Assembly: GCA_024679065.1 (NCBI GenBank) | Contig: JAGIQG010000004.1 | Location: 54,746,001-54,810,000, forward strand | Source of the DNA: Sphyrna mokarran | Taxonomy: Eukaryota | DNA length: 64,000 nucleotides | Direction: 5' to 3' | In this document: positions 24,571 through 54,856 of the stretch, piece by piece | How positions within the stretch are numbered: the stretch's first letter is position 1 | Layout: each line of letters begins with the position of its first letter | The notes under the pieces: generated by a model | Told to the model about the DNA's origin: nothing | The model's database searches: none | What the model saw: the letters and a program-made list of their open reading frames with translations, nothing else | Position numbers and translations under genes: made by a program

Positions 24571-24631
24571 ATGTTGCCAAATTTGATCTTTCTCTTCATG
24601 TTCCTGTCACTCCTGATGATCATTTTAACAG
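24571..24631 (+). CDS. VJ-C1 IgSF receptor gene A, exon 1 (signal peptide MLPNLIFLFMFLSLLMIILT)
   Basis: ATG, 20 hydrophobic codons and a phase-1 donor G|GTATTG, in frame with exon 2. Confidence 0.85.
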
Positions 24632-24816
24632 GTATTGGGATATTCTCTATCCCAAATAAACCATTTTTCCACAGTTCTCACGTCAGTTGTATTAAATGTA
24701 ATTCTATGGCTGTAATCGTTTTTTATTGCATTTCCGTGCAGAAATGTGTACCAAAGTCTCTGGTTTCACATTGAACACAGTCAATTAATATAAACCTTAA
24801 ATATATTTTCTAACAG

Positions 24817-25137
24817 GTGCTCTAGGAGCTTCAATCAGTGTGTCTCAAAGTCCTGAACAGGTAACTATATTAAGGGGGGCAAATATCACCTTCTACTGCA
24901 TAATCCCCCTTTCTCATGACAATGTGGATATCGAGGTACTTTGGTGGAAACAGGGAGAAAATAAATATATGACAAAAGGAACCGATGACAGAAAACGATT
25001 CGATTTCAAAAGTAAAGGAGGTGGTTCATTTGAGCTGCGAAACTCCACTCTCCAGGACTCAGGGATCTATCACTGCGCAGTGATCCATCAGGGAAAAAAT
25101 GTTGGAAATGGAACAGGATCAAATTTAGTTGTCTGCG
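24817..25137 (+). CDS. Gene A exon 2: V-set Ig domain with germline-joined J-like G strand
   Basis: Acceptor ttttctaacag|, donor G|GTAAGT. Reads VSQSPE..ITFYC..WWKQ..LQDSGIYHC..GNGTGSNLVV, with the canonical Cys, Trp, DxGxYxC and GxG motifs. Confidence 0.93.
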
Positions 25138-25734
25138 GTAAGTGACTGAAATTACCGGGAACATCAAGCACTTTGTTTTGCCATTGTTTTATTGTGCTGC
25201 CTTTGATATTGTAAAACTCTGTGCAAAACAGTTGACTACGCAGCGGAATGTGAGATTTTATCTGCTGTGTTCTTTCATACTGCTGGAAATACTCAGCAAT
25301 TCAGGACACGTCTGCAGAGAGGCAAAGTTAAAATCTCAGATTTAAAAATTTTTTGAGTAAAATGTTATCTGATTCAGCTCAAAATGTAATTTTTACGTCA
25401 GGTTTCTCAGCCCGAGGTTGGCCCACATAATCTCCATTCTCCAGACGGAGGAAACAACCTCGCCAAATCTATCCTGAGAAGCACATTCACAATCTTGAAT
25501 TTTCCAATGACATCACTTCATTTTAATTTTTTTCATTCTTCGCCTGCATGAGCTTCCATAAATTTATATAACCTTGCTTTTATTACCGGTTTCGGACTGA
25601 TTTTCTCTTGCGGACGCTGTTATCTGATCTATTCTTACCAGCATAAGGGAAAGCAATGAGGATATGATTCGAATCTCATTCCTTACTCTGAACATTTCTC
25701 CACCAATCTGATTTTCTCCATGTTCTATTCGCAG

Positions 25735-26046
25735 CTGCACCAATTCCGTTAAAGATTTCCGCTAAGCATCTGACAAGCAATTCAACTGCGTTCCTGAATC
25801 TTGTGTGTCAGACAGCTGGGTTTTATCCGGGTGATTTGACTCTCCTTTGGTATAAAAATGGCATCAACATCGCAACGGTAGGAAATCCGATCAAACAGCA
25901 GAACGCAGAAGGACTGTATGAAGTTTCCAGCTCTTTTGACGAGACGCAGTCTGTGCAGAAAGAAACTGTTTATATCTGCTTGGTAACTCACATCTCTCTC
26001 CGAACTCCCGCCATTGCCATTCACATAGTTAACAACTCCTGCCCAG
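25735..26046 (+). CDS. Gene A exon 3: C1-set Ig domain
   Basis: Acceptor ttcgcag|, donor G|GTATGA, 312 nt. Reads LVCQTAGFYPGDLTLLWYKNG..YICLVTHISL, with the C1 hallmarks FYP, W and CxVxH. Confidence 0.93.
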
Positions 26047-27128
26047 GTATGAGTTCGAAAGGCCAAGAAGTGTAGTTAGCAGTTTTTAAATATCAGAAAA
26101 GGTATCCGTTAGAGATTATTGACATCACTAATCATGAAGATAGTTTTAAAATAAAATACCTATTATTAGCCATTGAGTTACTTCTTATTTTATTTTTCCA
26201 ATGTTGTTTTTCTTACCCGATTTTTTAGAAAATGAAGCGTCAGTTTGTTTTATTGGACTCATGCGAAAGTGACATTACGGATCGAAATTATCTTTCTGCG
26301 GAAGCAGGGCCAATAGAAGTTAACTCTGTTTCTCTTCATAGATGCTGCCAGACCAACAGTATTTTCTGTTTTTATTTTACTTCATGCAGTGTTTTAGAGC
26401 AGGGAGGCATTTCATAAAATGCATTTCGACTTTCGCTGTGATTTGCTTCCGTTAAATATAACTGAAACTCATCTGATTAATGATAACTATTTCTGCTTAA
26501 TTAATAAACAGCCGAAATTTAATTTGGGGGTGAAAATTAAGCATTACTTTGACAGCGATCTCTTTTCTAATGCAATGACCGTCTGTAGTTAATAATTTAT
26601 TTTGTTGAATTGGAAAAAGAGCTACTCTACCAGGCTGGCAATTCCAAGTCTCAGTAATTTGCCGCGAATTAATCAAATAAGAGTGGAAGAAGCAAAGAAA
26701 ATTGAAGTTACAAAAACGTCCTTCTGTCAGACGCAATGTTAATCCTTTCACGCCAATGTTTAGAACATCCGAAATTGGTAATCTCCCTGGCAGATAATCA
26801 TGACATTGTGCCACTCTGTGAAAGTAAGTTACTTTTACTTGCAGCTTATAATGGTAAATGCCTTGGCGCTTGGAGATATGGAATATTTAGTTAGAACTGC
26901 TGTATGTAAAATGATTCGGAGATAAAAATGATCCGGTTGTTCATTTGTAGTTTTTCCACGTCAGGTCTAGAAAAATGACTTAAGGTTATTTTTAAACGTC
27001 CTTCTCATAAGGTTGTACATAGCTGCTGTAAATATGAGCAGTAGTTTACCCAATCGACTGTCATGACAGCTAAGGATCGGTAATGCAGAAACACATTAAA
27101 ACACATAACCAACTATTTTTTCTTGCAG

Positions 27129-27239
27129 GTTCTGATGGTGGATGTCATTATCTCTGGATTTCTAGGTGTGTGATGGCTGGATTGGTGTTTCTGATGCTTA
27201 TAACCATCACTGGGGCGAAACTGATTTCGAAGAATAAAG
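27129..27239 (+). CDS. Gene A exon 4: connecting peptide and transmembrane (GSDGGCHYLWISRCVMAGLVFLMLITITGAKLISKNK)
   Basis: Acceptor tttttcttgcag|, donor G|GTAACA, phase 1/1. Hydrophobic stretch followed by basic residues; aligns with gene B exon 4. Confidence 0.85.
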
Positions 27240-28303
27240 GTAACACATAATTTTCATTCTGGCATAAATCTGCAGGACACCCTCACGTAAACCGACATGT
27301 CTCTAGAATGCAAAAGGAGGATTTTCAGTCCACCCAGACTTCATTGATTCGCTGAATGTCCTTTCTATCAAACCCCACTCCGCCGCTTTTCTCCGTAATT
27401 TTGCATATTATTTCTTTTAAGATAGCATTCGAATTCCCGCTCGAATACGTCGACCGAAATTCGTTTCAGGCTTCAACCACCCTTTGGGTGTACAAAATCC
27501 TCATGTTAATTTCTATTGCTTTGCCTAATATTTTGAAACTGTGCCCTATACTTTTTGGATGTACCTCCGAGAGCGAAGAGTTTCTCACTGGTTGCCTTGT
27601 CCATAGTCCTTAGGGCCTGGGATATCTTTATGAACTTTTCTCTCAGCCATCTAGTTTCCAAGGAAAACAGACCCAATTTAAGCAAACTATGCTCATATCT
27701 TGCTTCTTTAGAATTATTCTTGTGAATTTACTGAGCAGTTCCACACGATAACTATTCAATTAATGCTTATTTGAAGCAAAATAAAATATTTTGCTCCAAA
27801 TAAACATTAATTGAAAAGTTATAATAATATATAATAATTAAATTATATAAGCAAAATAAAATATTTTGCTCATAGTCCAGCTGAATTCAGAATGTTGTGA
27901 TGAAAGAATTGCCACAAATTGTAAAGAATCACATGATTCGGACAACATCAATGACGTTTTTAAGTAAAATGCTCTCAACGTCCTTTCCAGTCTGCTGTAC
28001 GCGAATGCTGATGAATTCATCAATGCGGATTTCACACGAAACCCGGAAAATTTAGTACCTCAAAATAACTTGATAGTAATCCTACTTGATCGGCCTCGAA
28101 ATGTGGATTGTTCACTTCAATGTAGAATGCAATTCTTTGTTATGGGATCGGAAGACGTTTCACATACTGGTCTACCTAAAAGTTTATTCCACACAAAGAA
28201 AGTAATCTCCGTGTATTATTAGTAAAATGATAATTTTAGTTTTGTTTTATCAATGATCTGTGTACTAGCATTCACAGTTACACACGTCATATTATATTTG
28301 TAG

Positions 28304-28404
28304 GGAAATGTCGTGCTTATATTACTGCAACAGTAGTTCAAAGATGTGGATTCGCAATGCCGATCAAATGGGGTAAAACTTGCAATAGGATTGTGAGAGC
28401 TTAA
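28304..28404 (+). CDS. Candidate gene A cytoplasmic/terminal exon (GKCRAYITATVVQRCGFAMPIKWGKTCNRIVRA*)
   Basis: atttgtag| acceptor in phase 1, open to TAA, at a position analogous to the gene B candidate exon at 55291. No ITIM. An alternative terminal acceptor exists at 29621 (GDEA*). Confidence 0.3.
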
Positions 28405-30459
28405 GTTCAGTTATATAACATTTGATCAGTAAAAGATTTGTCATTTGAGTGATTAGCTTAACATGTTAAGTATCGGTTTAATATACTTTGGAGCCGAAAA
28501 CTCGATTTATCACGATCAATCTGCGTGTGACTCCAATCCTACAACAGTATGACTAGCTCTTAACAGGCCTTTGATCTGGCCGTGCAAGCAGCTTACTTCT
28601 CTCCAACGAAAGATGAGAATAAATATCTGCGTCAGTGTTGCCCACGTTCAAAGAATAAATAAAACAAAATTCTGTAGTTTGACGTTTTTTTGCCTGCTTA
28701 GCATTCTTGTGCATTTTTTAAAAATGCTTCCTTTGCTGTTTAAAATAACAAATATATTCAGAGTGTCCACATAACTCAATACCCAATGAAACACCAATTT
28801 TGTGGCTCTTTAAAACAAACATTTTTCACAATAATATTGGTCCATTCTATACATTGGTTCCTGCTTGTTTAATCTATATCGTAGTATCTTGCCTTTGTGA
28901 TTTAATATCCAATGGCCTTTCCCATTACTGCTCTTCATTGACTGCTTTGCAGTCTGAATCCGGTGTCTCTTTGAATTCCATCCTAAGATGTTATCAACAT
29001 AATCAATTGCTAATTTTCTTCATGGTTGGAAAATTCTACTATTCTGTGCGCTGAATTCCCACGTCATATAAATTCCTTGGAAAGCAAAAGCATGCAAACT
29101 GACTGAATATCATGATCATGAAATGTACTTAAATTGCATTAATCCGGTTAGGTCAGAAAATGTAGCAATACTGGACCGTGAGCTGGTAAATTCTTCTAAT
29201 TTATCGAAGAAAAGATTTAATTTTCTATAAATGCTGTGGAAATGGAAATTGTTTACTACAACCAATTTCACAAAAGGTCTTTATCTCTCTTTCATGTCCG
29301 TTAAAATATTGTTTTGACGAACATTTGATACTTCTTGGATATAGGTGCAGGTGGTTAAAGAAATGCCGAAAATTACATTGGAAGTTTCATCAACACACAC
29401 AGCTATGTACTAATTACATACAATTATCGGTGCGTTGCTTTTGCAAGTTGGCATTGCATGTCGAAGATGTTGAGATGGACTCGAATTGTGCTCTATCTAT
29501 AACACTGCAGTGTATTGAAAATCGATAGAATGAAATGTCAGTTACAATAGGCACCCGAATTTCCATTAACGTTGACACATCAATATGTGTATTCACTGTG
29601 GTTGATGCATTTTTTTTTAGGTGATGAAGCATAACACGCTTGCGAGAGCATTGAGAAGGTTAATGTTGTAGCAATGCGCCGCTTGTGTTTTTGCTATATT
29701 AACAATTGTTGCGAAATATGTACCGCAGGGGCGGGTTTATAAAACTAAATAAAGAAAATGCTCATTAGTCATCTCGCTGCGGTAGTGTTTTCTTTAATTT
29801 AGATGTGAATGATTACAACATTAAAATGCATTTAGTGTTACTATCAATATAATGCCAGCAGTTCTGCTTACTTGCAGAAACAGACAATGTTTGGATTAAA
29901 CGGAAATTCTACACCATGTTTTCCATTGTAAACCTTTCTAATTCACGAACAAATGGAAGCTTCAGCCGGCTCGCTTTAAGACCATGAATTTTCCTAATCT
30001 TCTAATTTCTAATATAATGCTACATGTATGAGCATGTTCTTAAATATATTTTTAGGTTATTTCTTTATTTCTCTATACATATCTATTAGCATTTATCTGC
30101 TAAACTTGTGACATGTGCCTTTGTGTAACTCACTGAAATGTTGCAATGATGATGATCAAATTATAGGTAAGTAGGATTGCAAGTAACTGGGAGCACAACC
30201 ACTAGAAAGTTCCTTTTCAAGCCATTCACCATTTGGATTTAGAAATGCATCATCGTTTACTCTTGTCGCTAGGTCAACATCCTGAAACTCACTCCATTGC
30301 AGCTCTGCAGGCATGCTGAACCTGCAGTGCTTTCCTAGGATAGCTCATGGTCATCTCAGAAGTCGCTGGCGATGAGCAGTAAATGCTTGCCGAGAAAGAG
30401 ACATCCAAAGCCAAAATCAGATGCGTTTTGAAGTCTGCAATTAATATATGGAATCCCTA

Positions 30460-30890
30460 TTGTGCAGAAGGAGGCCAAACGGCCCATCAAGTCTGCTTCG
30501 ACTCTCCGACAGGGCATTCCACAGACAGTCACCCAAGGCCAGAATCAAATCTGGTCCCCGGACATTGTATTAACCACTGTGCCAGCGTTCCGCCTTTTCC
30601 CAAACGGCAAAAACAAAAATGTGACGGGGGACTGGGCGGCAAATTGGCACTGTGGTTAACATTGCTGTCGCTCCGAGCCAGGGAACAGGATTTGATTCCA
30701 GGCTTGGTGTCACTGTTTGCACGTTCTCCCGGTGAGTTTCCTCTGGGTACTCTGGTTTCTTCTCACAATCGGAAAGCTGTGCTGGTTAGGTATGGCTTAA
30801 TTCTTCCAACAGGCATCAGCGTGTGGCGACACCAGGATATTCACAGTAATTTCATTGCGGTGTCAATGTAAGACTATTGTGACTAATAAA
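30460..30890. mobile_element. HE1/V-SINE-like fragments (one minus, one plus)
   Basis: gtgcagaaggaggcc..cagtcacccaaggccagaatcaaat..taaccactgtgcc (minus), then gggcggc..tggcactgtggttaac..gttctcccc..ggtttc (plus). Confidence 0.65.
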
Positions 30891-31199
30891 TTATCTTTCC
30901 TTTTTAAACTTGTGGGAGGAAAGTGGTGCACCCAGAAGAATTCCACACAGATAGAGGGAACTCCACACATACAGTCACTCCCAAGTCCGGAAATGAAACG
31001 GGTCCCTGGCGCTGCGAGACAGCAGAAACATTACATAGAAACGAGAAGCAGGAACAGGCTTTCGACCCTTCAAGCCTGCTTTGCCATTCATTGTGATCCT
31101 GACTGATCTTCAAATTCAATATCTTGATCCCAACTTTCCCCTGTACTCCTTGATCTGTTTAGCCCTAAGAGCTATATCTAATTTATTCCTGAAATTACA

Positions 31200-33780
31200 T
31201 ACGTTATTTGGTGTTTATTATAGACCCCCAGATAGTCAGCAGGAAATTGGAGAGCAAATATATGTGCAATTGTCAGAGAGGTTTAAAAATGATAAGAGAG
31301 CGATTATATTAGGTGATTTCAATTTTCCCAACATTAATTGGGATAACTACCATGATAAAGGCTTAGACGGAGCAGTTTTCTTAAAATATATTCAGGAAAA
31401 CTTCTTAGGTCAATATGTAAAGGATCCAACGGGAAGGAGCTATGTTGGACTTAACTCGGGGGAATGAAGCCAGACAAGTGGTCGATGAGCTGGTAGGAGA
31501 GCATTTTGGTGATTATGACCACAACATGATTCAATTCAAAGTTGTTATGGTCAAATAAAGTGACATGCTGCAGAAAAAGGTTTTCTTTTCGAGGAGAGTA
31601 GATTTTAACAGAATTAACAAGGATCTGGCAAAAGTAGATGGAAAAATATAAGAAGGGAAATGTACAGAAGATCAGTGGGGGGTATTCAAAGATGAAATGG
31701 GGTGCGGTACATACCCAATATGTTCCCTTATATGTTCCTGTATGTTTGTTATAGGAAAGTATAACAAATCCAGAGAACCACGAATGACCAGAGGCATTAA
31801 GAATATAATAAGAAGGAAAATACAGGTTTTAATAAATATAAGGGGAATAAGCTTGCGGAGGCACTAGTGGAGCATACAAGATGCAGGATACTCCTTAAAA
31901 AAGATCAATTACAAGAGCAAAGAGGGATATAAGAAAGCTCTGGCTGGTAAAAGGAGGGGAAATCCTATGATATTTTATAATGGAAAGAGATAACCATGGA
32001 AAGAGTAGTGCGCATTAGGGACCAAGGGGAAATCTGTGGATGGAACCGGGTGTTAAATGAATATTTCATATCTATTTTCACCCGCGAAAATAAGGATGTA
32101 GTGTTGGATCTCGGAGAGAAAGACACAGGCGTTAGAGAAAACAGGGAGGGACAAAGTATTGGATGTAACTGGAGTTATACAACTCCAGTTCCGGTTGAAT
32201 TGTGACTCAGGTTGCTGTGGGAGGCAAGGGAGGAAATTGCAGGGGCTCTGACCCAATTTTTTAATTCCTCCCTGGCCACCGAGCAGGTGCCAGAGCTCTG
32301 GAGAACAGCTAATGTGTTCCCACCATTTAAGAAAGTTTGCAGAGACAAGCCAGGAAACGATGAACTAGTAAGTCTTATGTCTGTGGTTGGGAAATTACTG
32401 GAGAAGATTCTGAAGGACAGAATCTACCTCTATTTGGAGAGGCAAGGTTTGATCAGAGGGAATCCAGCATGGATTTGTCAGAGAGAGGTCATGCTTAACT
32501 AATTTGCTTGTTTTTTTTTTGAGCATGTAACCAAGTGTGTGGTTGAGAATAGAACGGTTGATGTAGCTTGCATGGATCTCAGCAAAGCCTTTGATGAAGC
32601 CCCACGTGGGAGACTTTAAGAACACTAATGCACATGGGATACAGTGCGGTTTGACAAGGTGGATTCATAATTGATTTAGCGGTAGGAGATAGAGAGTGGT
32701 GACAGATGACTGCTTTAGTGACTAGAGGCAGCGATCAGTGGCGTTATATAGGGATCTGTGCTAGGCCCTATTGTTCGTAATTTATATAAATTACATAGAT
32801 GACTATGTAGGAAGTGGGATCAGTAAGCTTGCCAATGAAGCAAATATTGGTTGGATAATTAACAGAGTGTCTTGGGTGACATGATATATATATATAGTAT
32901 ATATATTTTTACATGAGATGGTCAAATGTGCTGTTAAGTGGTGGATGGAATTTGACCCTGAAAAGAGTGAGATGATGCACTTTGAACGGAGTAATTTGAC
33001 AAGGAAGCATGAGACGAAAGGTCCGACACTGGGAATTTTTGAAGAACAAAGGAACCTTGGAGTCTTTGTCCATAGATCTCTGAAGGTGGTAAGACAGGTT
33101 AATAGACTGATGTAAAAGATATATGACACACTGGCCTTTATCAGTTGGGGCATAGATTGGAAAATAGAGAGATCATGATAGAGTTGTATACAACTTTGGT
33201 GAGGCCACAGCTGTAGTACTGTATGCAGTTGAGGTGGTCATATTATAGGAAGGATGTAAATGTACTGGAGGGGGTGCAGAGGCAAATTACCAGAATGTTA
33301 CCTGGGATGGAACATTTATGTTATGAAGAGTGGTTGGATAAGCTTGAGTTGTTTTCGTTGGAACAGAGAAGACTGAGAAGCAACCAGATTGAGGTGCTCA
33401 AGATTTTGAGGGGCATGGACAGGGTAGGTATGGAGCAGCTGATCCCCTTAGTTGAAGAGTCAGCTAAGAGTGGACACAAGTTAAAAGTGAGGGATGGGAG
33501 ATTTAGGGGGGATTTGAGACAGAACTTTTTTTACTCAAAGAGTGGTGACTGTCTGGAAAGTACTGCCTAGAATGGTGGTGACGTGGGAGGCCTCACATGC
33601 TTTAACAAGTATGTGGATGTGTACTTGGCACGCCATAATATTCAAGGCTGTGGGCCAAATGCTGGCAAGTTGGATTAGGTGGGCAGGTAACTGCACTTCA
33701 TGCACCAGTGCAGATTCGATGGACCAAATGGCCACATCTGCGCTATAATATTCTGTGATTCTGTTACTCTGTGATTCTAC
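31200..33780 (+). mobile_element. Degenerate CR1 LINE (EN-RT-tail) inserted in the older CR1
   Basis: GVYYRPP, ILGDFNFPNINW, LWEAREEIAGAL, WMEFDPEKSEMMHF and TRMLPGM motifs, plus a (ctgtgatt)n-like tail. Confidence 0.9.
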
Positions 33781-37577: not shown

Positions 37578-37599
37578 ATCGATTGAATAAAGCTATGTG

Positions 37600-38862: not shown

Positions 38863-38972
38863 GACCTCATGTTAAATAGCATTGCATTTGGGTTTCTTGT
38901 ATTGCGGTGGGTAGATTGGCTTTTCTGATATTCGCGGTCATAGTTGGGAGAGATTCTGTCTGAAGAATACAG
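38863..38972 (+). pseudogene. Disabled transmembrane exon paralogous to exon 4 of genes A and B
   Basis: Acceptor ttttgcag|, donor AAGAATACAG|GTAGGT (gene A: AAGAATAAAG|GTAACA). Reads GPHVK*HCIWVSCIAVGRLAFLIFAVIVG. It is 110 nt versus 111 in gene A, so it has an in-frame TAG and a net 1-nt frameshift. Confidence 0.7.
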
Positions 38973-40981: not shown

Positions 40982-41161
40982 AAAAATCAGGACAAAGTTG
41001 TGACATATGCCGCAGTGAATTTGAAAATGTCCACTAAAACTCGAAGACATAAAGCTGAAGAAAATGTGACAGCGCATGTTCAGATGCGTCTGAAAATTAG
41101 AGAAGAAAAAGTATCGAATACCTGCGAAGAGCCAATAATAATGAAATTGCGGAGTACTTGA
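40982..41161 (+). CDS. Terminal cytoplasmic exon with ITIM (KNQDKVVTYAAVNLKMSTKTRRHKAEENVTAHVQMR...ST*)
   Basis: cacacgcag| acceptor in phase 0. Canonical ITIM VTYAAV at 41000-41017; open to TGA at 41161. May be a pseudo-exon. Confidence 0.6.
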   Translation, partial: KNQDKVVTYAAVNLKMSTKTRRHKAEENVTAHVQMRLKIREEKVSNTCEEPIIMKLRST

Positions 41162-45340: not shown

Positions 45341-45488
45341 GATGGTCCAGATAAAGCACTCATTTACGACATGAAGCACCAGGCAACCCATGAATCAACA
45401 TCCAAGAGCTGTCCTCGCACCACCTGCCGAATGCATGCTCCTTGTTGGTCAAGTTGGACCGAATTACCTGTGAAAAAAAAAGTCATAG

Positions 45489-47381
45489 TTAAACAGTCCT
45501 ACTATATCCCTCTATCTGCATACCGCTCATGTGGCTGTCCAAGAGACCCTTAAACAGCCCTAGCGTGCCTGCTCCCACCACCTTACTCGGCAGTGCATTC
45601 CACACCCCCACTACCCTTTGTGTGAAAAACTGCCCTCTAATATTCGTCTTATACATAGCCCCCCTCACCCTAAGGCCATGACCCCTCGTCCTATCCATTT
45701 CTGAAGGTGGAAAAAGTTTACCACCATTTACTCTATCTGTACCCCTTATAATCTTATACACCTCTATTAGATCCCCTCTAAGCCGACGTCTTTCAAGGGA
45801 AAACAACCCCAGTCTATTCAATCGTTCCTCATAAGACAGTCCTTCCATACCAGGCAGCATCCTGGTAAACCTCCTCTGCACTCTCTCCAAGGACTCCACA
45901 TCCTTCCGATAGTACGGCGACCAGAACTGGACGCAGTATTCCAAGTGAGGCCTAACCAACGTTCTATACAATTGCAACATCAAACTCCTACTCTTGTATT
46001 CTATACCCTTTTCTATGAAAGCTAACATACTATACGCTTTCTTTATCACCTTCTCCACCTGTAAAGACACCTTCAGAGACTTGTGAACCTGCACCCCCAG
46101 GTCTCTCTGCGTCTCTATACTCCGAATAGTTTTACCTTTTATCCTATAGCTCTCTTCTACATTTTTCCGGCCAAAATGCATCACCTCGCATTTATCCGGA
46201 TTAAATTCCATTTGCCATCTATCTGCCCAGTCTACCAACCTGTCTATGTCCTGTTGTATTGCCTGGCACTGCTCCTCTGTACCCGCCAATCCAAGCATCT
46301 TAGTGTCATCAGCAAATTTGCTGATCTCACCACCTACCCCAACTTCCAAGTCGTTTATGTAAACCACAAATAGAAGAGGACCTAGTACTGAGCCTTGTGG
46401 CACTCCACTAGTGACAGGCCTCCAGTCGGAAAAAGAGCCTTCCACTACTACCCTCTGTCTCCTCCCGAGCCAGTTCTCGACCCATCTACATACCTGGCCC
46501 TGTATCCCATGCGCCTTCACCTTCTCTATCAGTCTACCATGAGGAACCTTGTCAAACGCCTTACTGAAATCCATGTAGACGACATCAACAGCATGTCCTT
46601 CATCAACTGTTTTTGTCACTTCTTCAAAAAATTCCACTAGATTTGTAAGACAAGACTTCCCCTTGACGAAGCCATGCTGCGTATCCCTGATCAGATCGCA
46701 GCGCTCCAGATGCTCATACATCCTGTCCCTGAGGATCCTCTCCATTAGCTTACCTATAACTGAAGTCAAGCTCACCGGCCTATAGTTCCCTGGGTTATCC
46801 CTCTGACCTTTTTTAAACAACGGTACTACATTTGCTATCCTCCAGTCCTCTGGGACCTCACCTGTGTCCAAGGAAGAGACAAAGATTTGCGCCAGAGGCC
46901 CAGCTAGGTCTTCCCTCAACTCCCTTAGCAGCCTGGGGTAAATGCCATCAGGCCCCGGAGCTTTATATGTCTTTAAGCTGCCTAACAGCCCCAACACCTC
47001 TTTCCTCGTAATCTTTATTTCCCTCAACGGATCCTCAACTTTGTCAAAATCAGCAACAGACATCTGGCCAGTCTCCTGCGTGAATACCGACGCAAAGTAT
47101 TCATTCAGGATCTCCCCCATTCCCTCAGGCTCTAAGCATAGATCCCCTCCTCTGTCCCTGAGAGGTCCAATCTTGCCTCTAACCATCCTTTTGCTCCTTA
47201 CATAGGAGTAAAATGCCTTAGGATTTTCCTTAATCCTGCTTGCCAGAGCCGCTTTGTGGCCCGTTTTTGCCTTTCTAACACCCCTTTTAAGATCCCGTCT
47301 ACACTCTCTATAAGCTTCCAGCGCTGTCTCAGTCCCCAGTTGCCTAGATCTAATGTAAGCCTCTCGCTTCTTCCTGATCAA
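45489..47381 (-). mobile_element. Young 5'-truncated CR1-type LINE with an uninterrupted 630-aa RT ORF
   Basis: ORF 45489..47381 reads KAPGPDG, NYRPVSLTS, TQHGFVKGKSCLTNL, DFSKAFDKV, GVPQGSVLGP, KFADDTK, HLEYCVQFWSP. Confidence 0.95.
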
Positions 47382-47679
47382 GTCCTTTTGTGAGCTTAGT
47401 TTGAAATTCGTGCATGGGGAAGGTCAGTTGGTTTTGTAATAGATCTTGTAACCTCGTTATGCACGAATAGACTGTGGACAGCAAAACTGATAAAGCTCCC
47501 ACCTTTAATGGTTGTTAGTGTTGCCCCTAAAATGACATAAGTTATTGGACAAGCATGTGTTGACATTGCAAGGCGAGGTCTCGATCGAAAGTGACTGCTA
47601 GATTTTAGATTATTTTCCCCTTTTATTCTTTCTACCCATCCTTCTTTTGCTCCTTTCTCTCTTTATTGCAGTCTGTGGT

Positions 47680-48018
47680 CATAGAAGCCAACAGTGCAGA
47701 AAAAGAGCCTTCGGCCCATCGATTGTGCACCAACCACAATCCCACCCAGGTCCTACCCTCATATCCTTACATATTTTACCCGCTAATCCCTCTAACCCAA
47801 GCATCCCAGAAGACTACGAGATATTTTTTTTTAGCAAGGCCAATCAACCTAATCCGCATATCTTTGGACTGTGGGAGGAAACCGGAGCACCCGGAGAAAA
47901 CCTACACAGACAAGCGGAGAACGTGCAAACTCCACACAGGCAGTGACCCAAGCCGGGATTAGAACCCATGTCCCTAGAGCTGTGAAGCAGCAGTGCTAAC
48001 CACTGTGCTACAGTGCTA
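47680..48018 (-). mobile_element. HE1/V-SINE-like SINE
   Basis: tctttggactgtgggaggaaaccggagcacccggag..cagtgctaaccactgtgc. Confidence 0.85.
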
Positions 48019-51000
48019 TGATCTACTGTTGGGTCTCGAACCGCGCAATTTCCATTGTCTGGTCTACAGACAGATTTACGGTTATAGAGCATTTGTTTAT
48101 AGCACAATTTAAAAGTGCTAATCCAGAATACTAACAAAAGTGTGTCGATGGTTTTGACAAATAATTGATGCGAAGTAGGGGCATTGTCAATGTTACTGTA
48201 CACAATGGGGATATCTAAGAAGCCGAAACTTCTTTTCAAGCTTCTTGAACAATCGAAATGTTTGTTTGCTGGAAGCCTTTTCTGCCCAGCACGGCGTTGA
48301 CGCCGAACCCAGTTCACTCTTCGACCTGATTGTTTCCAAACAATATAAACGCTGTTCTGTCCAGCCTACTTGACATAACCTTAAGAGGTGGAACTGAAAC
48401 CCGAATGCATTTTAGCACAAAGTTGTTCAAAATACAGTACGTCATCTCCAGTTGATATAAATGGCTTGAGCTATGCAGCAGGGATGAAGCTAATGCGCAG
48501 ATAAATCTAAACCTTTTAAACACTAACTTAAACTGGAAGATAACTTAGCGCTTCTATAAATACCAACTAAAAACCAACGATTCCCTTATTACAACATTTA
48601 TTATCTCTTCAATTATTTCAGACTGTTGTCCTCACTTCGGTACCTCAAGTCTCTTCCACCGTGGACCAGTCTTGTGTGGCTTAATGGTTTTCATGTTTTT
48701 ACTGTTGACATGCAGGTGCCAACGCAAATTTATACAGGCTGGTGATTGTTTGTTTTTCTACAAATGTTACCTGTTGACTAGTAAAATCTAGGATATTGAC
48801 TTAAGATGTTGCAGCGTAATGTGCCTCCAAGTCAATGTGGTGTGATATTTACAGAAGAGATTGGAGGTGATTGCATTCCCTTGACGTTGCTGCTTTCATC
48901 CCGTTCAGTGGCAGGGATTGTACGGCTATGAAGTGCTGTCCAATAACATCGCCCTTCCTAAAAGAGACCAACAACATCGCCCTTACAAAACGTCTAAAGT
49001 AGCTTGCATCTCTAACCGGATGCTGCTCTGAATTTCGATCACAGTGTGTGTTTCACATCGGCTATTGCAATCCAGTCAACTGCACTATATTTAACCAATC
49101 AATCTGAAATTTCACTTCCGTGTATATCGCTTTATTTAAAATAAATACCCGAAACTTCATAATGTGCGACTGTGAGACATATGAGAACTGCAAGTATTAA
49201 ATTACTTTATTAATAACACGCTGAAATCGAGAGAGGGCATCAGTTTTGACAACATGATACTTCATGACACAATGATAATGAACTCCTAAGTCTGAATCTT
49301 TCCTAGACTCGTACAGACATGGCTATTGTTAAACAACACATGATTATTCAGTGTTTATTTTGTAACATGCGAACCTAAGTTCTTATGCAATTGTTTCTGG
49401 AAAGTCATTGTGGCAACGATTTACATTGATGACAACTATCATTATAATTAACTGTGTTATAACATTGCGCCCCGAAACATTATTTATGCATCCGCAGCTC
49501 TGAAGTGCCTGCTAAGTCCAATGATATTATGAGTCGAACATGTCCATAGATGTTATCAGATTGCAACCTTTCAAACATAGATAGACATAGCAACAGCCGA
49601 GTTGTCAGGTGCTGTGGGATAAATCGAGATGAAAGATATTGCTTTAACTATAAACAATAACAAACCCATGACGCAGATATCTCTGCACAAAAATATAACA
49701 TTTATTCAAAGCAAAAACATGCAGCAAATAATCAAAAGCGTTAAATAGCTTTGAGATAGGACCTCTCTGGTAAATCTAACGTATACAATCAAAACCTGAG
49801 AAATTTACCGTTTTTCTTATCAATTATTCCCGTCTTATAATAGTTTTAAATCAATTATATTTAATATAAATTAATCAATAATCATCCAAAAATATCACCT
49901 CAGCCAATTGCATTGTACCATCCAGCATGACGATATCTCATTCGTCAATTTAATCCAAATTTAGTCCTAACTCTCATTTTGACTAAGTCACTTTCTTGTT
50001 GTCTAACTATCCTAAACGCTTACTTTAGAGGTCAAAGTGGATGTTCCCATCGGATCATTTTCAAACTGGATTAAACTGTGATCACGCGTCCGGGCACGAC
50101 CCATCTTAAGGCTAGACAATGATTAAACCTACTTGTTGATGTTGCAATATGTGTTCCCGCATAAGAAAGTTTCCTGATATGAACTTTGCTAACTACGGGT
50201 TTCCAGGCCTTTGACTCTAAACTATTCGCCTTTACTATCATCTCTTACCGTAACCTGCTTTCGCCTGAAAAGAACGGTGATTTAGACAACACTTAAAATA
50301 CATAAAAGTATATATATTTTAAAATCATAATTTACTCATATATGAAATCATTTATGACCTCTTACTGATTTCATTTATGAGTAAACTATTCACTCATTAA
50401 GTTATTAATATGCTTGAAAATCATTTAATTCTTTATTTGTAGTCCTGTCAGTGTCTTATTAAAAACCTTATTAACTGGTTCGAAATTTCCTACATCTTTA
50501 GGTCTATCCCGAACAATTATTTTTAATCTGATTGAACCTTTGCCTGTTCGCCCCCCCCCCCCCCGCCCCCATATCATGAATTTTCTATATTGCATGGCTC
50601 CAACTATTTCCCTCTTTTTATAATAAATATATTAACCAGAAAACTTTAGATAATTTCTACAGACTATTGAATTCAAGACCTGTTCCTCCTGAAGTCTTCC
50701 AATCAGAGCTCGTAATTTGCTTTCTCTGATGATGGGAGGATTGGGTTTTTTTTGTCAGTCAAATTACTGTCAATAATAACCGTCTCTTGATTATTCTTGT
50801 TTTCCATCTGACGCGTTGTAACCCCGATATTTGCCCGTGAATCGCAGCTTCTGAATATAAAAGAAGTTGCAACGCATGGTGCACGCGGCATTGGAAACGG
50901 ACTATTATGACCCCTCCTTTCACAATTACAGATGCCCATAAAACACACCAAGTTGCATTGGAAAGCTCAGACGATTCCGCAAAAGTATTTCATCAAGTAC

Positions 51001-51157
51001 GATGCATTATGCAACTTTAAAGATACCTTACGAAAGAAATTTGAAGTTATATTGAATGCTCTGTGGTAAGGGTTAAATAATATACCTGGGGCATACGCCT
51101 TCAGCTTACTCTTTAAACTCGGCCGATGGCACCAAAATCAGCAGAGTATCGCCTCTT

Positions 51158-51163
51158 ACGTCA
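51158..51163 (+). promoter_or_regulatory. CRE half-site ACGTCA, same distance from the ATG as in gene A
   Basis: CGTCA starts exactly 100 nt before the ATG in both genes (24471 vs 24571; 51159 vs 51259). Confidence 0.4.
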
Positions 51164-51258
51164 TCACCTTACACTGTTCATCATGTTATACGTGGCGCTA
51201 TTTCTCCTCAGATCGAGACTTTCGTGTTAATTTCACACATCCAGTACCTATCGCTAAA

Positions 51259-51313
51259 ATGGCATCGAGTGTTGTGCTTCACAGCGCACAGGTCATCTGG
51301 ATTACCTTGATTG
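51259..51313 (+). CDS. VJ-C1 IgSF receptor gene B, exon 1 (signal peptide MASSVVLHSAQVIWITLI)
   Basis: aaaATGG Kozak context and phase-1 donor G|GTATTT, like gene A. In frame with exon 2, but less hydrophobic than the gene A leader. Confidence 0.65.
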
Positions 51314-51412
51314 GTATTTATTATAGTTCACACCTTGTCTTTCCGTCTGTGTCTCGCTCTCGCTCTGTCTTTTTTATATATAACTAAAACGAGTGTTCAT
51401 TTTCTTTCATAG

Positions 51413-51730
51413 TTGCTGCTAATCCTCTGATTGAAGTGACTCAGTCCCCTGAAAATATCAATTCGATAATCGGGGCTAATGTTGCATTCGACTGCACGTT
51501 TCCTACTTCTCACGACAGTTTAGATGTGAACTTTCATTGGTGGAAACTAGGCGAAAAGGATTTGATGCGGCCAGGATCAGATAACAGGAAATGGTTTGCC
51601 ACTGGGAATGGGAGAGCCTCCTTTCAACTTCTGAATATCAGTATTCAGGACTCTGGAGTCTATTACTGCGGAGTGACACTTCAGGGAAAATGGGTCACAA
51701 ATGGCAGTGGATCAACCCTCGTCGTCCGTG
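51413..51730 (+). CDS. Gene B exon 2: V-set Ig domain with germline-joined J-like G strand
   Basis: ttttctttcatag| acceptor, G|GTAAGA donor. Reads VTQSPE..VAFDC..WWKL..IQDSGVYYC..NGSGSTLVVR. Confidence 0.93.
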
Positions 51731-52667
51731 GTAAGAGAAGTGTTAAGACGATAAGCTGCATAGTCTCAAGGTTACTCAAATAAACAACAAAGATTCGCAT
51801 CCCTTCAGAGTTCGCTTGGCCGATTTTTAAATAGTTACATTGGAAATTAATTGCTCCAATAGAAAGATTGGAGTCATGAAACAAAGATACTCTTTTTACC
51901 GTCATACTTGTTTGGTAATCATTACTTCTGCTCTTTCATGCGTTCAACCTGCACAAAAAAATGTTTTCAGTTCATTGAAATGTGGATGCAGATTGTGAAA
52001 CAACTTGAATTAATTTATGCACAAGTAATATTTCGAATAGTTTAAAACAGTGCTTATTAGCAAAAAAGATACATGTATTCTTATTGAATCCAATTATAAT
52101 CAGAACACAAGTCATACTCTTCCGCTTTGAAGCGAATGTATATATAGAGCAGGTGGTGTTTCCAAGAGTTTTACAAGCGTACTTCTGTTTTAATGTACGA
52201 TTTCCAATTCAATACAAGAGCAACTCCAAATGCTTCACCCGTTTTCGAGTTCTTCTACCTATTCATCCAAACAGAAAAATCTAATTTCGAGAATTTATAT
52301 AGGGAAGGATAAAATTGCGCCCAGTTCAAAAGATCTGGAATGCTCGTTACAAGTAGATTCAGTAGAAATTAAAAAGGAAATTTTATATGCATTTGAAGTA
52401 GAATACTTGCTGCACTGGAGTAAGAGCCGAGACGTGAAATTAATTGCTTATTTCTTGCATAGAGCCACCGCAGATGCAATGAACCGACTGGCATTCTTTA
52501 TACTCTATGATGCAACAATCTACAATAATTACAGAGCGATTTTTAATTCCGCTAGTAATAAACAGATTGATAGCTCTTTGAGCTGTCTTAGCTCAAATTG
52601 AATAAAAGTGAATGCCACTCTGAAGAATTTACGGTATATATAAATTCATTTTTCGATCTTTCGCCAG

Positions 52668-52979
52668 CTCTTCCAACTCCCATGAAGATTCTTCCCCGCG
52701 CATCTGCAAGCAATGTACCTGATTCTTTGATGCTTGTGTGCGAAATGGCTTCATTTTACCCGGCGGATCTAACTATCACTTGGTACAAAAATAATGAAAG
52801 CATTGAGAATGGAATTCATACCATCAAACAACTCAGCAAAACTGGAATGTTTGAAGCTTCCAGATGCTTTGAAGAGACACAACCTGTCCAGGGAGGGACT
52901 GTTTATACCTGCCTAGTTTCTCATGCAACTCTCCAGATTCCGGCCATGGCAACTTACGTAGTTCCCAATTGTAAACCAG
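52668..52979 (+). CDS. Gene B exon 3: C1-set Ig domain
   Basis: ctttcgccag| acceptor, G|GTATGA donor, 312 nt (same as gene A). Reads LVCEMASFYPADLTITWYKNN..YTCLVSHATL. Confidence 0.93.
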
Positions 52980-54304
52980 GTATGAAATCAGTTTTCTTGG
53001 AAAAAATGACAATGAAGTAAAATCTAACGTCGTTGAAAGTGAATGGATTGTAAATTTCAGCGCAGGGGCAACGATGGCAATAAAATGTAAACTATATTTA
53101 TAAAATCAGGTCATTATTTAAAGTATTGAAATGTATTCTTTGTTTCCACTGCCTTTGCTTTTCCATTTTCAGGCCGAGCAGCTCCTCGGAATAGAGACAA
53201 CTTCTTAAATCGAAGAAACTTCCACTTTTGGTCGGGAGTGAAAAGCCGGTCTCGGTTGGACCGCGTTATTTATATTGCCAGATTTTACTTTCAATTTATT
53301 GTACAACCAAATTTGCATATTCGCGCAATGCAATTGCATCTCAACAGCTCAGTAAATACTGAAACCCAGAAAATGTTGTTTTCACAAAATTCATTTCCCT
53401 CACCGGTTCAATTTAATTCATCAATATTGTATATTCAAACTGCGTTCATTATCTGCCAAATTCCCACTTCAACTCATAATTTAGTGCCTCCCCATTGTAA
53501 TCACAAGTGGATTTCTCTAGTCCGGCGCAGATCTGAGACTTGGGTTAGAGTTCTTCATCCTGAAGTGGCAAATGGAAATGAATCCTTGACGGCTCTGTGG
53601 CAAATGTATATCTTAACATTTTCTGTGTTGGCGATTTTTAGTGGAATGGAAAACGTGTTCAACTAAAATTCTGTCTTCTGGTTATCAAATACTTGTTGCA
53701 TATTTAGCTTTCTTGAAATAATGCCAGAAATGGATTGAAATTGAAATGGTGCGTTGTCACCGTAGGTAAAGTTTTACACTTACATTTTGTGGAGAAAATT
53801 AACAAGCGTAGACTTACATAGAGAGAAATCCTTAACATCAAGAAGCACTGATGCAACTCCAGACAATGCCAAGGAGGAATTAATACTTGAATTACCTAAT
53901 CTAGTAAAACAAAAGAAATATTTTATAGCAACGATAGTAACCAAGTGTGAAAAAAAAACTGGGACTAAGTATCGGTGAGGCGATAGTTAAAATAATTTTC
54001 CCATTCTGCCCACCACGGGAATTGTAGCTGGCAGGGGGCGGGAGGTCTGTTAACCCCGGCTGGGATTTTCCGTTTTCCGGGCTAACTCAAACTGAAAATT
54101 TTCGCCCCCTGAAATTCGTCTTGAGCGACAGCGCAAATTGGCCGACAACTAATCAGTGGCAGTTGCTGTAATCTCCTGATTACCTTTTAGTTTTCTACAG
54201 GTTAAATGATGCAATGTGTCACTTACCCATCCCAACATGCAACGCTTAGTTTTAAATAGCGGAAAATGAATTTTCAACAAAAAAAGATATTCTGATTCCC
54301 CAGT

Positions 54305-54645
54305 ATGAACAATTCGGCATTTCTCGGCAAATTAGCCAGCATAATTAAAGATCTCTCGCACCCCCACCATTCTCTCTTCCATCCTTTTCCATCAGGAAAA
54401 ACATACAAATGTCTGATATCAAGTTCCAACCGACTCAAAAACAGCTTCTTCCGTTCTGCGATCAGACTTTTGAATGCACCTAGTTTGCATTAAGTTGATC
54501 TTTCTCTACACCCTAGCTATGACTATGACACGACATTCGGCGTTCGCTCGTTTCCTTCTCTATGAATGGTATGCTTTGTCTGTATAGCGCGCAAGAAGTA
54601 ATACATTTCACAGTATGCTAATACATGTGACAATTATAAATAAAA
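54305..54645 (+). mobile_element. Rex/Babar-like LINE 3' fragment in gene B intron 3
   Basis: LGKLASIIKDLSHPHHSLFHPFPSGKTY..RLKNSFFRSAIRLLN; same family as 34730-35970. Confidence 0.8.
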
Positions 54646-54736
54646 TAGAATTCTTCAATATTGGGATCTCTTTGCAGTTGTGACTGCAGATGACACTTGC
54701 ACAGCTCTAAGTTTGAAAGTTTTGTCAATCTTTCAG

Positions 54737-54856
54737 GTCGTGACAGCATCTCATCCTCATCTTACTTACGGATTTTTGGGTGCATAGGCTTCGCATTGAT
54801 GGTTTTGCTACTGTTGATCATCATGAGAATCTTGTTCATATTGGGCAACCCTAAAG
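54737..54856 (+). CDS. Gene B exon 4: connecting peptide and transmembrane (GRDSISSSSYLRIFGCIGFALMVLLLLIIMRILFILGNPK)
   Basis: atctttcag| acceptor, AAAG|GTAGGA donor, phase 1/1, strong hydrophobic helix. The YLxIxxC motif is shared with the gene A TM exon. Confidence 0.85.

What the first reader, a model, noticed from the sequence alone, without database searches (positions are those of the whole stretch)
24571..54856. Tandem cluster of non-rearranging, antigen-receptor-like VJ-C1-TM genes
Seen in sequence: two paralogs 27 kb apart with the same exon plan (leader / V / 312-nt C1 / TM) and phase-1 introns throughout. Hand alignment gives ~49/99 identities in V and ~49/104 in C1. Each V exon already carries a J-like GxG G strand (GNGTGSNLVV; NGSGSTLVV) followed directly by a splice donor, with no RSS. 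Established: C1-set domains are largely confined to Ig, TCR, MHC, beta2m, tapasin, SIRP and relatives, and a germline VJ + C1 + TM chain is the architecture proposed for the pre-RAG antigen-receptor precursor (cf. PRARP/VJC1-type genes, SIRPs, NKp30-type VJ domains). Inference: an expanded, diversifying family of innate TCR-chain-like receptors in a cartilaginous fish, possibly uncharacterised.
Basis: partly seen in the sequence, partly recalled or inferred. Interest (0 to 1): 0.88.

Follow-up and report, generated by a model that had tools for sequence, protein, structure and literature searches.

The report
Shark SIRP-like V-C1 receptor gene pair
Two intact, non-rearranging immune-receptor genes (a variable-type domain with a built-in J segment, one constant-type domain, a membrane anchor and a short tail) belong to a large cartilaginous-fish family that public databases hold only under inconsistent automatic names such as SIRP-like.

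Summary
Two + strand genes (A, 24571-27239; B, 51259-54856) share one exon plan: leader, V exon ending in a J-type G strand, 312-nt C1-set exon and TM exon. All splice sites are GT/AG and all introns are phase 1. The window has no RSS.

These are not orphan TCR-like genes. They belong to a large multigene family that I found only in cartilaginous fishes (20 species named). NCBI predicts these proteins under mixed automatic names: 18 of 53 SIRP-alpha/beta-like, the rest TAPBPL-, Ig-lambda-, NCR3LG1- or CD276-like, or uncharacterised.

Long-tailed members carry 3-5 ITIM-type tyrosines. Short-tailed members often have an Arg in the TM. Gene A is of the second kind: its nearest relative is a Mustelus asterias protein (89% in V, 80% in C1). 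Gene B is a short-tailed member of a different, old lineage. A decayed TM exon plus ITIM tail lies between them.

The C1 domains score about equally against every solved C1 class, so orthology to SIRP or PRARP stays open.

Ten literature searches found no description of the family.

First-reader notes report similar genes elsewhere in this genome.

The parts
24571..24631 (+). Gene A leader exon (MLPNLIFLFMFLSLLMIILT + 1 base), donor GT
   Evidence: It resembles the leader of Mustelus asterias P0158.
24817..25137 (+). Gene A V exon with germline J-type G strand (NGTGSNLVV), then Cys and the donor GTAAGT. It includes the last few leader residues (split leader).
   Evidence: Pfam V-set E 1.6e-10. 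Family V HMM E 6e-43. 89% identical to P0158. No RSS.
25735..26046 (+). Gene A C1-set exon, 312 nt, ends NNSCP
   Evidence: Pfam C1-set E 9.9e-11. Family C1 HMM E 1e-40. 80% identical to P0158.
27129..27239 (+). Gene A stalk/TM exon (SDGGCHYLWISRCVMAGLVFLMLITITGAKLISKNK) with an Arg in the outer part of the TM
   Evidence: tblastn to P0158 gives 67%. The Arg column goes with short tails across the family.
27965..28011 (+). Candidate last exon of gene A (…SAVREC, then stop). This is inferred. A second acceptor at 27989-27990 would give another frame, and read-through of the TM donor gives KNKGNT and a stop.
   Evidence: Mustelus P0158 ends VAVREC and S. canicula P0159 ends KNKGNEA. No RNA evidence.
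38863..38972 (+). Decayed TM pseudo-exon with two in-frame stops, of the type without the TM Arg
   Evidence: tblastn to Heterodontus P0157 residues 162-189 gives 54%.
40982..41161 (+). Orphan cytoplasmic tail exon: one intact ITIM (VTYAAV); the next motif has His in place of Tyr
   Evidence: tblastn to the tails of P0157, P0163, P0166 and P0169.
51259..51313 (+). Gene B leader exon (MASSVVLHSAQVIWITLI + 1 base)
51413..51730 (+). Gene B V exon with J-type G strand (NGSGSTLVV), then Arg and the donor GTAAGA
   Evidence: Pfam V-set E 8.9e-9. Family V HMM E 4e-37. 66% identical to S. torazame P0160. No RSS.
52668..52979 (+). Gene B C1-set exon, 312 nt, ends PNCKP
   Evidence: Pfam C1-set E 3.9e-12. 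Family C1 HMM E 4e-39. 71% identical to Heterodontus P0167.
54737..54880 (+). Gene B stalk/TM exon 54737-54856 (RDSISSSSYLRIFGCIGFALMVLLLLIIMRILFILGNPK). Read-through gives GRISH with a stop at 54872-54874, and ATTAAA begins at 54880.
   Evidence: tblastn to P0167 gives 80% over 20 aa. No separate tail exon was found in 54857-64000.

Best explanation
The window holds two intact members of a large multigene family that I found only in cartilaginous fishes. The family consists of type I membrane receptors built as split leader, V domain with a germline-joined J-type G strand, one C1-set domain, a Cys-bearing stalk, a TM segment and a tail. The genes do not rearrange.

The family comes in two signalling forms, as SIRP, KIR and NITR families do. 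Long-tailed members carry 3-5 ITIM-type tyrosines; I infer that they recruit SHP-type phosphatases and inhibit. Short-tailed members lack these motifs and often have an Arg in the outer half of the TM; I infer that they pair with an ITAM adaptor of the FcR-gamma, DAP12 or CD3-zeta kind and activate.

Gene A is a short-tailed, TM-Arg member. Gene B is a short-tailed member of a different, ancient lineage, with a basic residue at the TM border. Between them lies the decayed back half of an inhibitory member, perhaps gene A's former partner.

I infer that ligand binding is through the V-domain loops and that the conserved cysteines at the C1 end and TM border make disulfide-linked dimers.

Shown: gene structure, domain types, family membership, lineage placement, and the link between TM Arg and tail type. 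Inferred: expression, signalling partners, dimerisation and ligand.
For: - Exon models and splice phases.
- Domain types: Pfam V-set and C1-set above the cut-offs.
- Family size: a V-profile search of 1.84 billion representatives gave 154 proteins at E<=1e-10. The single-V hits of 250-400 aa share the leader-V-C1-TM-tail layout.
- Taxon range: all named family members are chondrichthyan, 20 species in all: 10 of 10, 6 of 10 with the other 4 being reptile multi-V proteins, 10 of 10, 23 of 23, 53 of 56.
- Nearest relatives: gene A to Mustelus asterias P0158, 89% in V and 80% in C1. Gene B to P0160 and P0167, 66-71%.
- The V and C1 trees agree. A sits in a 7-row clade (SH-aLRT 98) and B in a 4-row clade (97); each clade includes a ray (species names).
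- TM Arg: present in 11 of 77 unique stalk/TM rows. 0 of these 11 have two or more Tyr motifs, against 37 of the 66 rows without Arg.
- Constraint: dN/dS between A and B is 0.35 (V), 0.41 (C1) and 0.29 (TM), with dS above 1.
- No RSS.
- SIRP-alpha clusters are the nearest named clusters for long-tailed P0162, at 0.97.
- 18 of 53 automatic names are SIRP-alpha or SIRP-beta-like.
Against: - No RNA evidence: no RNA run was listed, so splicing, 3' ends and expression are unverified.
- The last exon of A is ambiguous and none was found for B.
- Gene B lacks the Arg at the column that marks the activating type. Its basic residues sit at the TM borders.
- The link to SIRP rests on architecture, a feature-based look-up and automatic names. 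SIRP d1 is not among the 60 best solved matches of the V profile. The C1 profile does not prefer SIRP over beta2m, Ig or MHC: 19-27 bits per domain for all. Short-tailed P0159 lies nearest to Ig-kappa-like and NCR3LG1 clusters, not SIRP.
- The likeness of the tail to SIRP-alpha's four tyrosines is recalled, not tested. The tail search found only 4 chondrichthyan proteins.
- The Arg/tail counts are not corrected for shared ancestry.
Confidence: 0.75

Rival explanations
1. The family is the direct co-orthologue of tetrapod SIRP genes. The two genes are then simply shark SIRP-beta-type genes that lost one C1 domain.
For: 18 of 53 automatic names are SIRP-alpha or SIRP-beta-like. SIRP-alpha clusters are nearest for P0162 at 0.97. 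The family profile aligns to SIRP-alpha 2wng across both V and C1, E 9e-32. Both have a V-then-C1 layout and paired long and short tails (SIRP features from the abstract and section 16 of PMC2785349).
Against: The family has one C1 domain, not two. The only V-C1-C1 model (P0043) has two near-identical C1 copies. SIRP d1 is absent from the best 60 V matches. The C1 profile is equidistant from all C1 classes. Short-tailed P0159 is nearest to Ig-kappa-like and NCR3LG1 clusters.
Confidence: 0.2
2. The family is the cartilaginous-fish counterpart of the PRARP genes, non-rearranging VJ IgSF genes first described in chicken (Fu et al. 2019).
For: As I recall that paper, the architecture is the same: VJ domain, C domain, TM, ITIM tail. 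PRARP is listed among joined-VJ IgSF genes in PMC11599192 (passage) and among VJ genes in PMC10751288 (passage).
Against: No PRARP sequence could be obtained, so nothing was compared. The paper is not held. No bird or bony-fish V+C1 protein was seen among the 83 named look-ups or in the domain table of the best 150 hits of the V-profile search, though most of those 150 were not looked up by name.
Confidence: 0.12
3. They are germline-joined immunoglobulin light-chain genes, which cartilaginous fishes are known (recalled) to carry.
For: 6 of 53 automatic names are Ig lambda-like. A lambda V-J-C stretch is the best single stretch for the family profile, at 71 bits. P0159 is nearest to an Ig-kappa-like cluster.
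Against: Both genes have a TM exon. Relatives have ITIM tails. None of the 84 J-type motifs in the family is preceded by the Phe or Trp of true J segments. The family forms one group apart from the reptile V outgroup (SH-aLRT 99).
Confidence: 0.02
4. One or both genes are unexpressed pseudogenes in a decaying cluster.
For: No RNA run was listed. A dead TM exon and an orphan tail lie between the genes. LINE fragments fill the rest of the window. The 3' ends are unresolved.
Against: All four exons of each gene are open with canonical splice sites. dN/dS is 0.29-0.41. The canonical Cys and Trp residues and the J-type motif are kept. Close intact relatives exist in other species.
Confidence: 0.1
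5. They are B7H6 (NCR3LG1)-, CD276- or tapasin-related (TAPBPL) homologues, as some automatic names say.
For: 14 of 53 automatic names are of these three kinds. An NCR3LG1 cluster ranks second for P0159.
Against: The same clades carry SIRP-like, lambda-like and TAPBPL-like names side by side, so the names are not consistent. The J-type GxG strand is present in 84 of 106 V domains. The multi-ITIM tails and TM Arg are not, as far as I recall, features of those families.
Confidence: 0.04

Closest known systems
SIRP family (SIRP-alpha, -beta, -gamma)
   Same: Both have an N-terminal V-set domain with a J-like G strand followed by C1-set domain(s). Both are non-rearranging. Both have an inhibitory long-tailed form with several tyrosine motifs and a short-tailed form with a basic TM residue. 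SIRP-alpha clusters are the nearest named clusters by protein features, and SIRP-like is the commonest automatic name. SIRP features come from the abstract and section 16 of PMC2785349; the SIRP-beta/DAP12 pairing from the abstract of PMC12975943 in a search listing.
   Different: The family has one C1 domain instead of two and many dozens of genes per genome. By sequence the V domain is closer to TCR-alpha and IgL V than to SIRP d1. The C1 domain is not specifically SIRP-like. Orthology, synteny and CD47 binding are untested.
[quoted passage not shown] 2019, J Immunol)
   Same: As I recall: non-rearranging VJ + C + TM + ITIM genes, discussed as relics of the pre-RAG receptor. The name is listed with SIRP, NKp30, NITR, CD8 and CD79 as joined-VJ IgSF genes (PMC11599192 passage).
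   Different: Reported from bony vertebrates as a gene pair, not as a large family (recalled). No sequence was available here, so membership is untested.
UrIg and UrIg2 of elasmobranchs
   Same: Both are non-rearranging, with a single-exon VJ domain, a split leader and C1-type domains in the same animals (PMC12227049 section 7). UrIg2 is the second-best solved match of the family profile, E 2e-37 summed over three C domains.
   Different: UrIg2 has nine C domains in nurse shark, and UrIg and UrIg2 are described as two paralogous genes, linked to the MHC and to the antigen-receptor complex respectively. Here there is one C1, a TM with short or ITIM tail, and a large family. Per-domain scores to UrIg2 C1 and C3 are no higher than to other C1 classes (20.3 and 19.2 bits).
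Teleost NITR and mammalian KIR/LILR paired receptors (recalled)
   Same: The logic is the same: large, fast-evolving clusters of non-rearranging Ig-domain receptors, with ITIM-tailed inhibitory members and short-tailed members carrying a charged TM residue. NITR V domains also carry J-like motifs.
   Different: The second domain here is a genuine C1-set domain (Pfam), not an I- or C2-type domain.
NKp30 (NCR3)
   Same: A germline VJ-type V domain with a GxG strand lacking the J Phe, and a TM Arg in an activating receptor (recalled). It is named as a non-rearranging MHC-linked VJ gene in PMC12227049.
   Different: NKp30 has no C1 domain.

Membership tests
IgSF C1-set domain | Match to the curated C1-set profile above its gathering score | tested here: met
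   PF07654 scores 42.3 bits (A) and 46.8 bits (B) against a cut-off of 21. The best solved matches are all C1 domains.
VJ-type (antigen-receptor-like) V domain | V-set domain whose G strand carries the J motif GxG[TS]x[LIV]x[VI], encoded in the same exon | tested here: met
   GTGSNLVV in A and GSGSTLVV in B, inside the V exons. The canonical Phe or Trp before the motif is absent: it is Asn here and in 69 of 84 family motifs.
Rearranging antigen receptor genes (Ig/TCR) | Recombination signal sequences flanking separate V and J segments | tested here: not met
   0 RSS-like sites on either strand of the window, and V and J are contiguous in one exon.
Rearranging antigen receptor genes (Ig/TCR) | Junctional diversity in transcripts | not testable with these tools
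   No RNA run was listed, so read laying could not be used.
SIRP family | V-set d1 followed by C1-set domains in a linear array | tested here: met
   V then C1, but one C1 instead of the two in SIRP-alpha (PMC2785349 abstract).
SIRP family | Inhibitory form with several cytoplasmic tyrosine motifs, and an activating form with a short tail and a basic TM residue | tested here: met
   Met at the family level: 37 of 66 rows without the TM Arg have two or more motifs, against 0 of 11 rows with it. Genes A and B themselves are short-tailed.
SIRP family | Specific sequence kinship of V and C1 domains to SIRP domains over other IgSF classes | tested here: inconclusive
   SIRP-gamma d3 gives the highest single C1 score (26.6 bits), but beta2m (24.8), CH3 (24.3), MR1 (24.1) and lambda (24.0) are equal within noise. 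SIRP d1 is not in the best 60 for V. SIRP-alpha clusters are nearest by features for a long-tailed member only.
SIRP family | Conserved synteny with the SIRP locus; CD47 binding | not testable with these tools
The window holds no flanking genes, only LINE pieces.
PRARP | Sequence kinship to chicken PRARPA and PRARPB | not testable with these tools
   No PRARP sequence could be obtained, and the paper is not held.
UrIg/UrIg2 | VJ exon followed by several C domains, in a single-copy gene linked to the MHC or the antigen-receptor complex | tested here: not met
   Each gene has one C1 exon and then a TM exon (one search finds only two C1 exons in 64 kb). This is a large family. UrIg2 features come from PMC12227049 section 7. 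Linkage was not testable.

The most novel reading that the evidence does not exclude
The family could be the least-changed living descendant of the pre-RAG antigen-receptor precursor: a myeloid- or NK-type, disulfide-linked VJ-C1-TM chain. It would have expanded in cartilaginous fishes into a paired activating/inhibitory recognition system that does the work of KIR, LILR or NITR. It would be sister to SIRP, PRARP and the rearranging receptors rather than nested within any of them. The conserved Asn-linked sugar site at the position of the J Phe would then mark a pre-rearrangement form of the G strand.
Probability: 0.15. Interest if true: 0.8.

Novelty: new member of a known kind. Interest (0 to 1): 0.45.

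Why it matters
C1-set domains are found almost only in molecules of adaptive antigen recognition and in SIRPs. A germline VJ + C1 + TM chain is the architecture proposed for the receptor that the RAG transposon invaded (PMC2785349 section 16; PMC10751288 passages; PMC12227049 abstract and section 7).

Recent work presents UrIg and UrIg2 as the non-rearranging VJ-C1 relics of sharks. In the parts I read, those papers do not mention the much larger VJ-C1-TM family to which these two genes belong. Databases hold that family under at least seven kinds of unrelated automatic names.

A proper description would need trees against SIRP, PRARP, UrIg, TCR and IgL, plus synteny and expression data. It would clean up the annotation. 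It would also show whether cartilaginous fishes have a SIRP-type paired-receptor system as their innate recognition repertoire, and add a data point to the debate on antigen-receptor origins.

For this window alone the result is modest: two ordinary, intact members and one decayed member of that family.

Tried and rejected
- **RNA evidence.** The look-up of sequencing runs (kind rna, gene B, 3.7 kb) listed no run. Read laying was therefore never called.
- **Tail homology to SIRP-alpha.** A search with the tail of P0017 alone at E<=10 gave only 4 chondrichthyan proteins out of 42 candidates. It says nothing either way.
- **Reaching non-chondrichthyan relatives with the 36-sequence profile.** Only the 8000 candidates sharing most words were scored. 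The three non-family hits (a grouper, a clam and a convict-blenny protein, E 1e-12 to 9e-8) lack C1 domains.
- **Ranking C1 classes through solved structures.** Whole-chain scores are inflated by multi-domain chains, and per-domain scores do not discriminate.
- **Last exons.** For B, no phase-1 exon resembling the Heterodontus or S. torazame C-termini was found in 54857-64000. For A there are two candidate acceptors and a read-through option, unresolved.
- **V or C1 relics for the orphan TM/tail.** None found.
- **MHC linkage from earlier notes.** The 8 MHC notes shown, out of 33, are on other pieces of the genome. No conclusion.
- **Literature.** Ten full-text searches found no description of a chondrichthyan SIRP-like or VJ-C1-TM family. 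Subscription papers are not searched. Fu et al. 2019, Flajnik et al. 2012 and 2023 and Ohta & Flajnik 2015 are not held. Supplementary files were not asked for; those of PMC12227049 and PMC10751288 might list such genes.
- **Rejected readings.** Recent tandem duplicates: the trees contradict this. Rearranging segments: there is no RSS.

Full report
**What is in the sequence.**
The window has no N runs. Two genes lie on the + strand, 27 kb apart. I read the DNA and checked every boundary by script.

- Gene A: leader 24571-24631, V 24817-25137, C1 25735-26046, stalk/TM 27129-27239.
- Gene B: leader 51259-51313, V 51413-51730, C1 52668-52979, stalk/TM 54737-54856.

All internal acceptors are AG and all donors GT. 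The leaders are 3n+1 long and the other exons 3n, so every intron is phase 1. Each V exon starts with the last few leader residues, which is a split leader. Both C1 exons are 312 nt.

MAFFT gives 51 of 106 identical columns in V, 48 of 103 in C1 and 12 of 39 in TM. Only the V and C1 exons are still alignable as DNA (65-67% identity); the other shared pieces are repeats.

Pfam gives V-set (E 1.6e-10 and 8.9e-9) and C1-set (E 9.9e-11 and 3.9e-12), all above the curated cut-offs.

The V exons end GNGTGSNLVV-C and TNGSGSTLVV-R, then one carried base and GTAAG. There is no RSS-like site on either strand of the whole window, and no heptamer near the V exons.

Family HMMs on all six-frame pieces find exactly two V and two C1 exons, with E values from 4e-37 to 6e-43. 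The next best hit has E about 1.

**The family.**
A profile of the two V exons was run against 1.84 billion representative proteins. It gave 629 hits at E<=0.001 and 154 at E<=1e-10. Most single-V hits of 250-400 aa have the same layout: leader, V, C1, TM, tail.

Every family member whose name I looked up comes from a cartilaginous fish:
- 10 of 10;
- 6 of 10, where the other four are reptile multi-V ITIM receptors with much lower per-domain scores;
- 10 of 10, chosen from the weakest V+C1 hits;
- 23 of 23;
- 53 of 56.

Together these name 20 species of sharks, rays, skates and a chimaera.

The automatic names of the 53 proteins are:

| Automatic name | Count |
|---|---|
| SIRP-alpha (PTPNS1)-like | 13 |
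| SIRP-beta-1-like | 5 |
| Tapasin-related-like | 6 |
| Ig lambda-like | 6 |
| NCR3LG1-like | 5 |
| CD276 homologue | 3 |
| MHC class II beta-like | 2 |
| Uncharacterised or hypothetical | 13 |

This suggests one chromosome per species.

First-reader notes of this scan, which are unchecked, report further genes of this kind just beyond the window's end and on other pieces of this genome.

**Where A and B belong.**
Separate V and C1 trees of 124 and 105 rows (quick IQ-TREE, SH-aLRT support) agree with each other.

- Gene A is nearest to Mustelus asterias P0158, at 89% in V and 80% in C1. It sits in a 7-row V clade (support 98) with Scyliorhinus, Chiloscyllium, Heterodontus and Mobula proteins. 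The C1 tree adds Pristis (support 92).
- Gene B sits in a 4-row V clade (support 97) with S. torazame, Heterodontus and Mobula proteins.

These results are, with species names. So A and B are old paralogues whose split predates the divergence of sharks and rays. They are not a recent tandem pair.

dN/dS between them is 0.35 (V), 0.41 (C1) and 0.29 (TM), with dS above 1. Variability in the family V domain is moderately higher in the A' strand and in the CDR1- and CDR3-equivalent stretches. Loop lengths are nearly fixed.

**Signalling type.**
In the 36-sequence alignment, long tails carry a repeated pattern of 3-5 tyrosine motifs of the kind xxYAxL ... TVYAQ ... LTYAAL ... TEYAEL.

I aligned 77 unique stalk/TM/tail rows. 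The column holding gene A's Arg (WISRC) is Arg in 11 rows. All 11 have tails of 61 residues or fewer, and 0 of the 11 have two or more motifs. Of the 66 rows without Arg, 37 have two or more motifs. These counts are not corrected for relatedness.

The Mustelus counterpart of gene A ends KNK-VAVREC. The window holds ...SAVREC followed by a stop at 28009-28011, with two possible acceptors. Read-through of the TM donor gives KNKGNT and a stop. Whichever is used, the tail is short.

Gene B's relatives also have short tails. I found no separate tail exon. Read-through gives GRISH and a stop, with ATTAAA six bases later.

In Heterodontus, the gene A lineage has a twin pair that is 92% identical over V-C1. 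One of the two (P0157) has a long ITIM tail. That is the usual picture of paired receptors.

In the window, a TM exon with two in-frame stops (38863-38972) and an orphan tail exon (40982-41161; VTYAAV intact, the next motif with His for Tyr) match P0157 best. This may be gene A's decayed inhibitory partner, and it has no V or C1 relic.

Pairing of the Arg with an ITAM adaptor, SHP recruitment by the long tails, and disulfide-linked dimers through the conserved cysteines at the C1 end and TM border are all inferences from what is established for SIRP, KIR and NKp30-type receptors. That knowledge is recalled.

**Comparison with known families.**
- *V domain.* Against solved structures, the V profile is nearest to TCR-alpha V (E 1e-8), then Ig light chain V, pIgR and PD-L1. 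SIRP d1 is not among the best 60.
- *C1 domain.* Per-domain scores of the C1 profile are SIRP-gamma d3 26.6 and d2 23.9, beta2m 24.8, CH3 24.3, MR1 24.1, lambda 24.0, UrIg2 C1 20.3 and UrIg2 C3 19.2 bits. The domain is a genuine C1 with no preferred class.
- *Full family profile.* It scores UrIg2 at E 2e-37 and SIRP-alpha at E 9e-32. The SIRP-alpha alignment covers both V and C1. Multi-domain chains inflate these totals.
- *Feature-based look-up.* It places long-tailed P0162 next to SIRP-alpha clusters (0.97). It places short-tailed P0159 next to Ig-kappa-like and NCR3LG1 clusters (0.96). The SIRP signal therefore comes largely from the tail and overall layout.
- *J motif.* The J-type motif GxG[TS]x[LIV]x[VI] is present in 84 of 106 unique family V domains. 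It is never preceded by Phe or Trp. In 69 cases it is preceded by Asn, which creates an N-G-S/T sugar site.

[quoted passage not shown] UrIg2 has a VJ exon, a split leader and nine C domains, and UrIg and UrIg2 are presented as the non-rearranging relics of elasmobranchs (PMC12227049: abstract and section 7). PMC10751288 calls UrIg a novel non-rearranging VJ-C1 gene and cites NKp30 and PRARP as other VJ genes (passages). None of the passages I read mentions this family. The PRARP paper (Fu et al. 2019) is not held, so what I say of it is recalled.

**Verdict.**
The genes are real, intact as far as sequence can show, and non-rearranging. They are ordinary members of a large cartilaginous-fish family of SIRP-like VJ-C1 paired receptors. 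That family is already predicted in public annotations but inconsistently named. As far as ten searches of the held library can tell, it has not been described.

Both genes are of the short-tailed kind, and gene A carries the TM Arg typical of activating partners.

Four questions remain open: expression, 3' ends, orthology to SIRP or PRARP, and chromosomal context.

Noticed in passing
window 38863-38972 and 40982-41161: A dead TM exon with two in-frame stops, and an orphan ITIM tail exon. Both best match the long-tailed Heterodontus twin (P0157) of the gene A lineage. No V or C1 relic goes with them.
   Followed up: partly
window 25105-25137 and 51698-51730; family alignment: The residue before the J-type GxG motif is never Phe or Trp in 84 family motifs. 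It is Asn in 69 of them, which makes a conserved N-G-S/T glycosylation site exactly where true J segments have their Phe.
   Followed up: partly
window 54857-54885: Read-through of gene B's TM-exon donor meets a stop after five codons (54872-54874), and ATTAAA begins at 54880. The TM exon may therefore be the last exon.
   Followed up: no
proteins P0108, P0010, P0021, P0124, P0110, P0201 (other species): A sub-set of the TM-Arg, short-tailed members also has an acidic residue followed by His deep in the TM (…IIVDHVK…). That makes two charged positions in one TM helix. P0129 carries the same acidic-His pair but has Gln at the Arg column.
   Followed up: no
window 18655-22052 (-), 45492-47423 (-), 31039-33567 (+), 5133-5878 (+): LINE fragments fill most of the rest of the window. 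They include reverse transcriptase (E 1.7e-22 and 3.1e-34), endonuclease (E 3.5e-7) and a GDSL-lipase-like ORF (E 2.6e-7).
   Followed up: partly
proteins P0001, P0003, P0004, P0018, P0046, P0140: The next-best matches of the V profile outside cartilaginous fishes are turtle, snake and gecko receptors. They have 2-6 tandem V domains, each with a J-type GNGT strand, and several of them (P0004, P0018, P0046, P0140) have ITIM tails. Their automatic names are titin-like, obscurin-like, pIgR-like and FCRL5-like.
   Followed up: no
protein P0043 (Amblyraja radiata): This is the only V-C1-C1 model in the set. Its two C1 copies are near-identical, which points to a recent exon duplication or an assembly or annotation artefact.
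   Followed up: no
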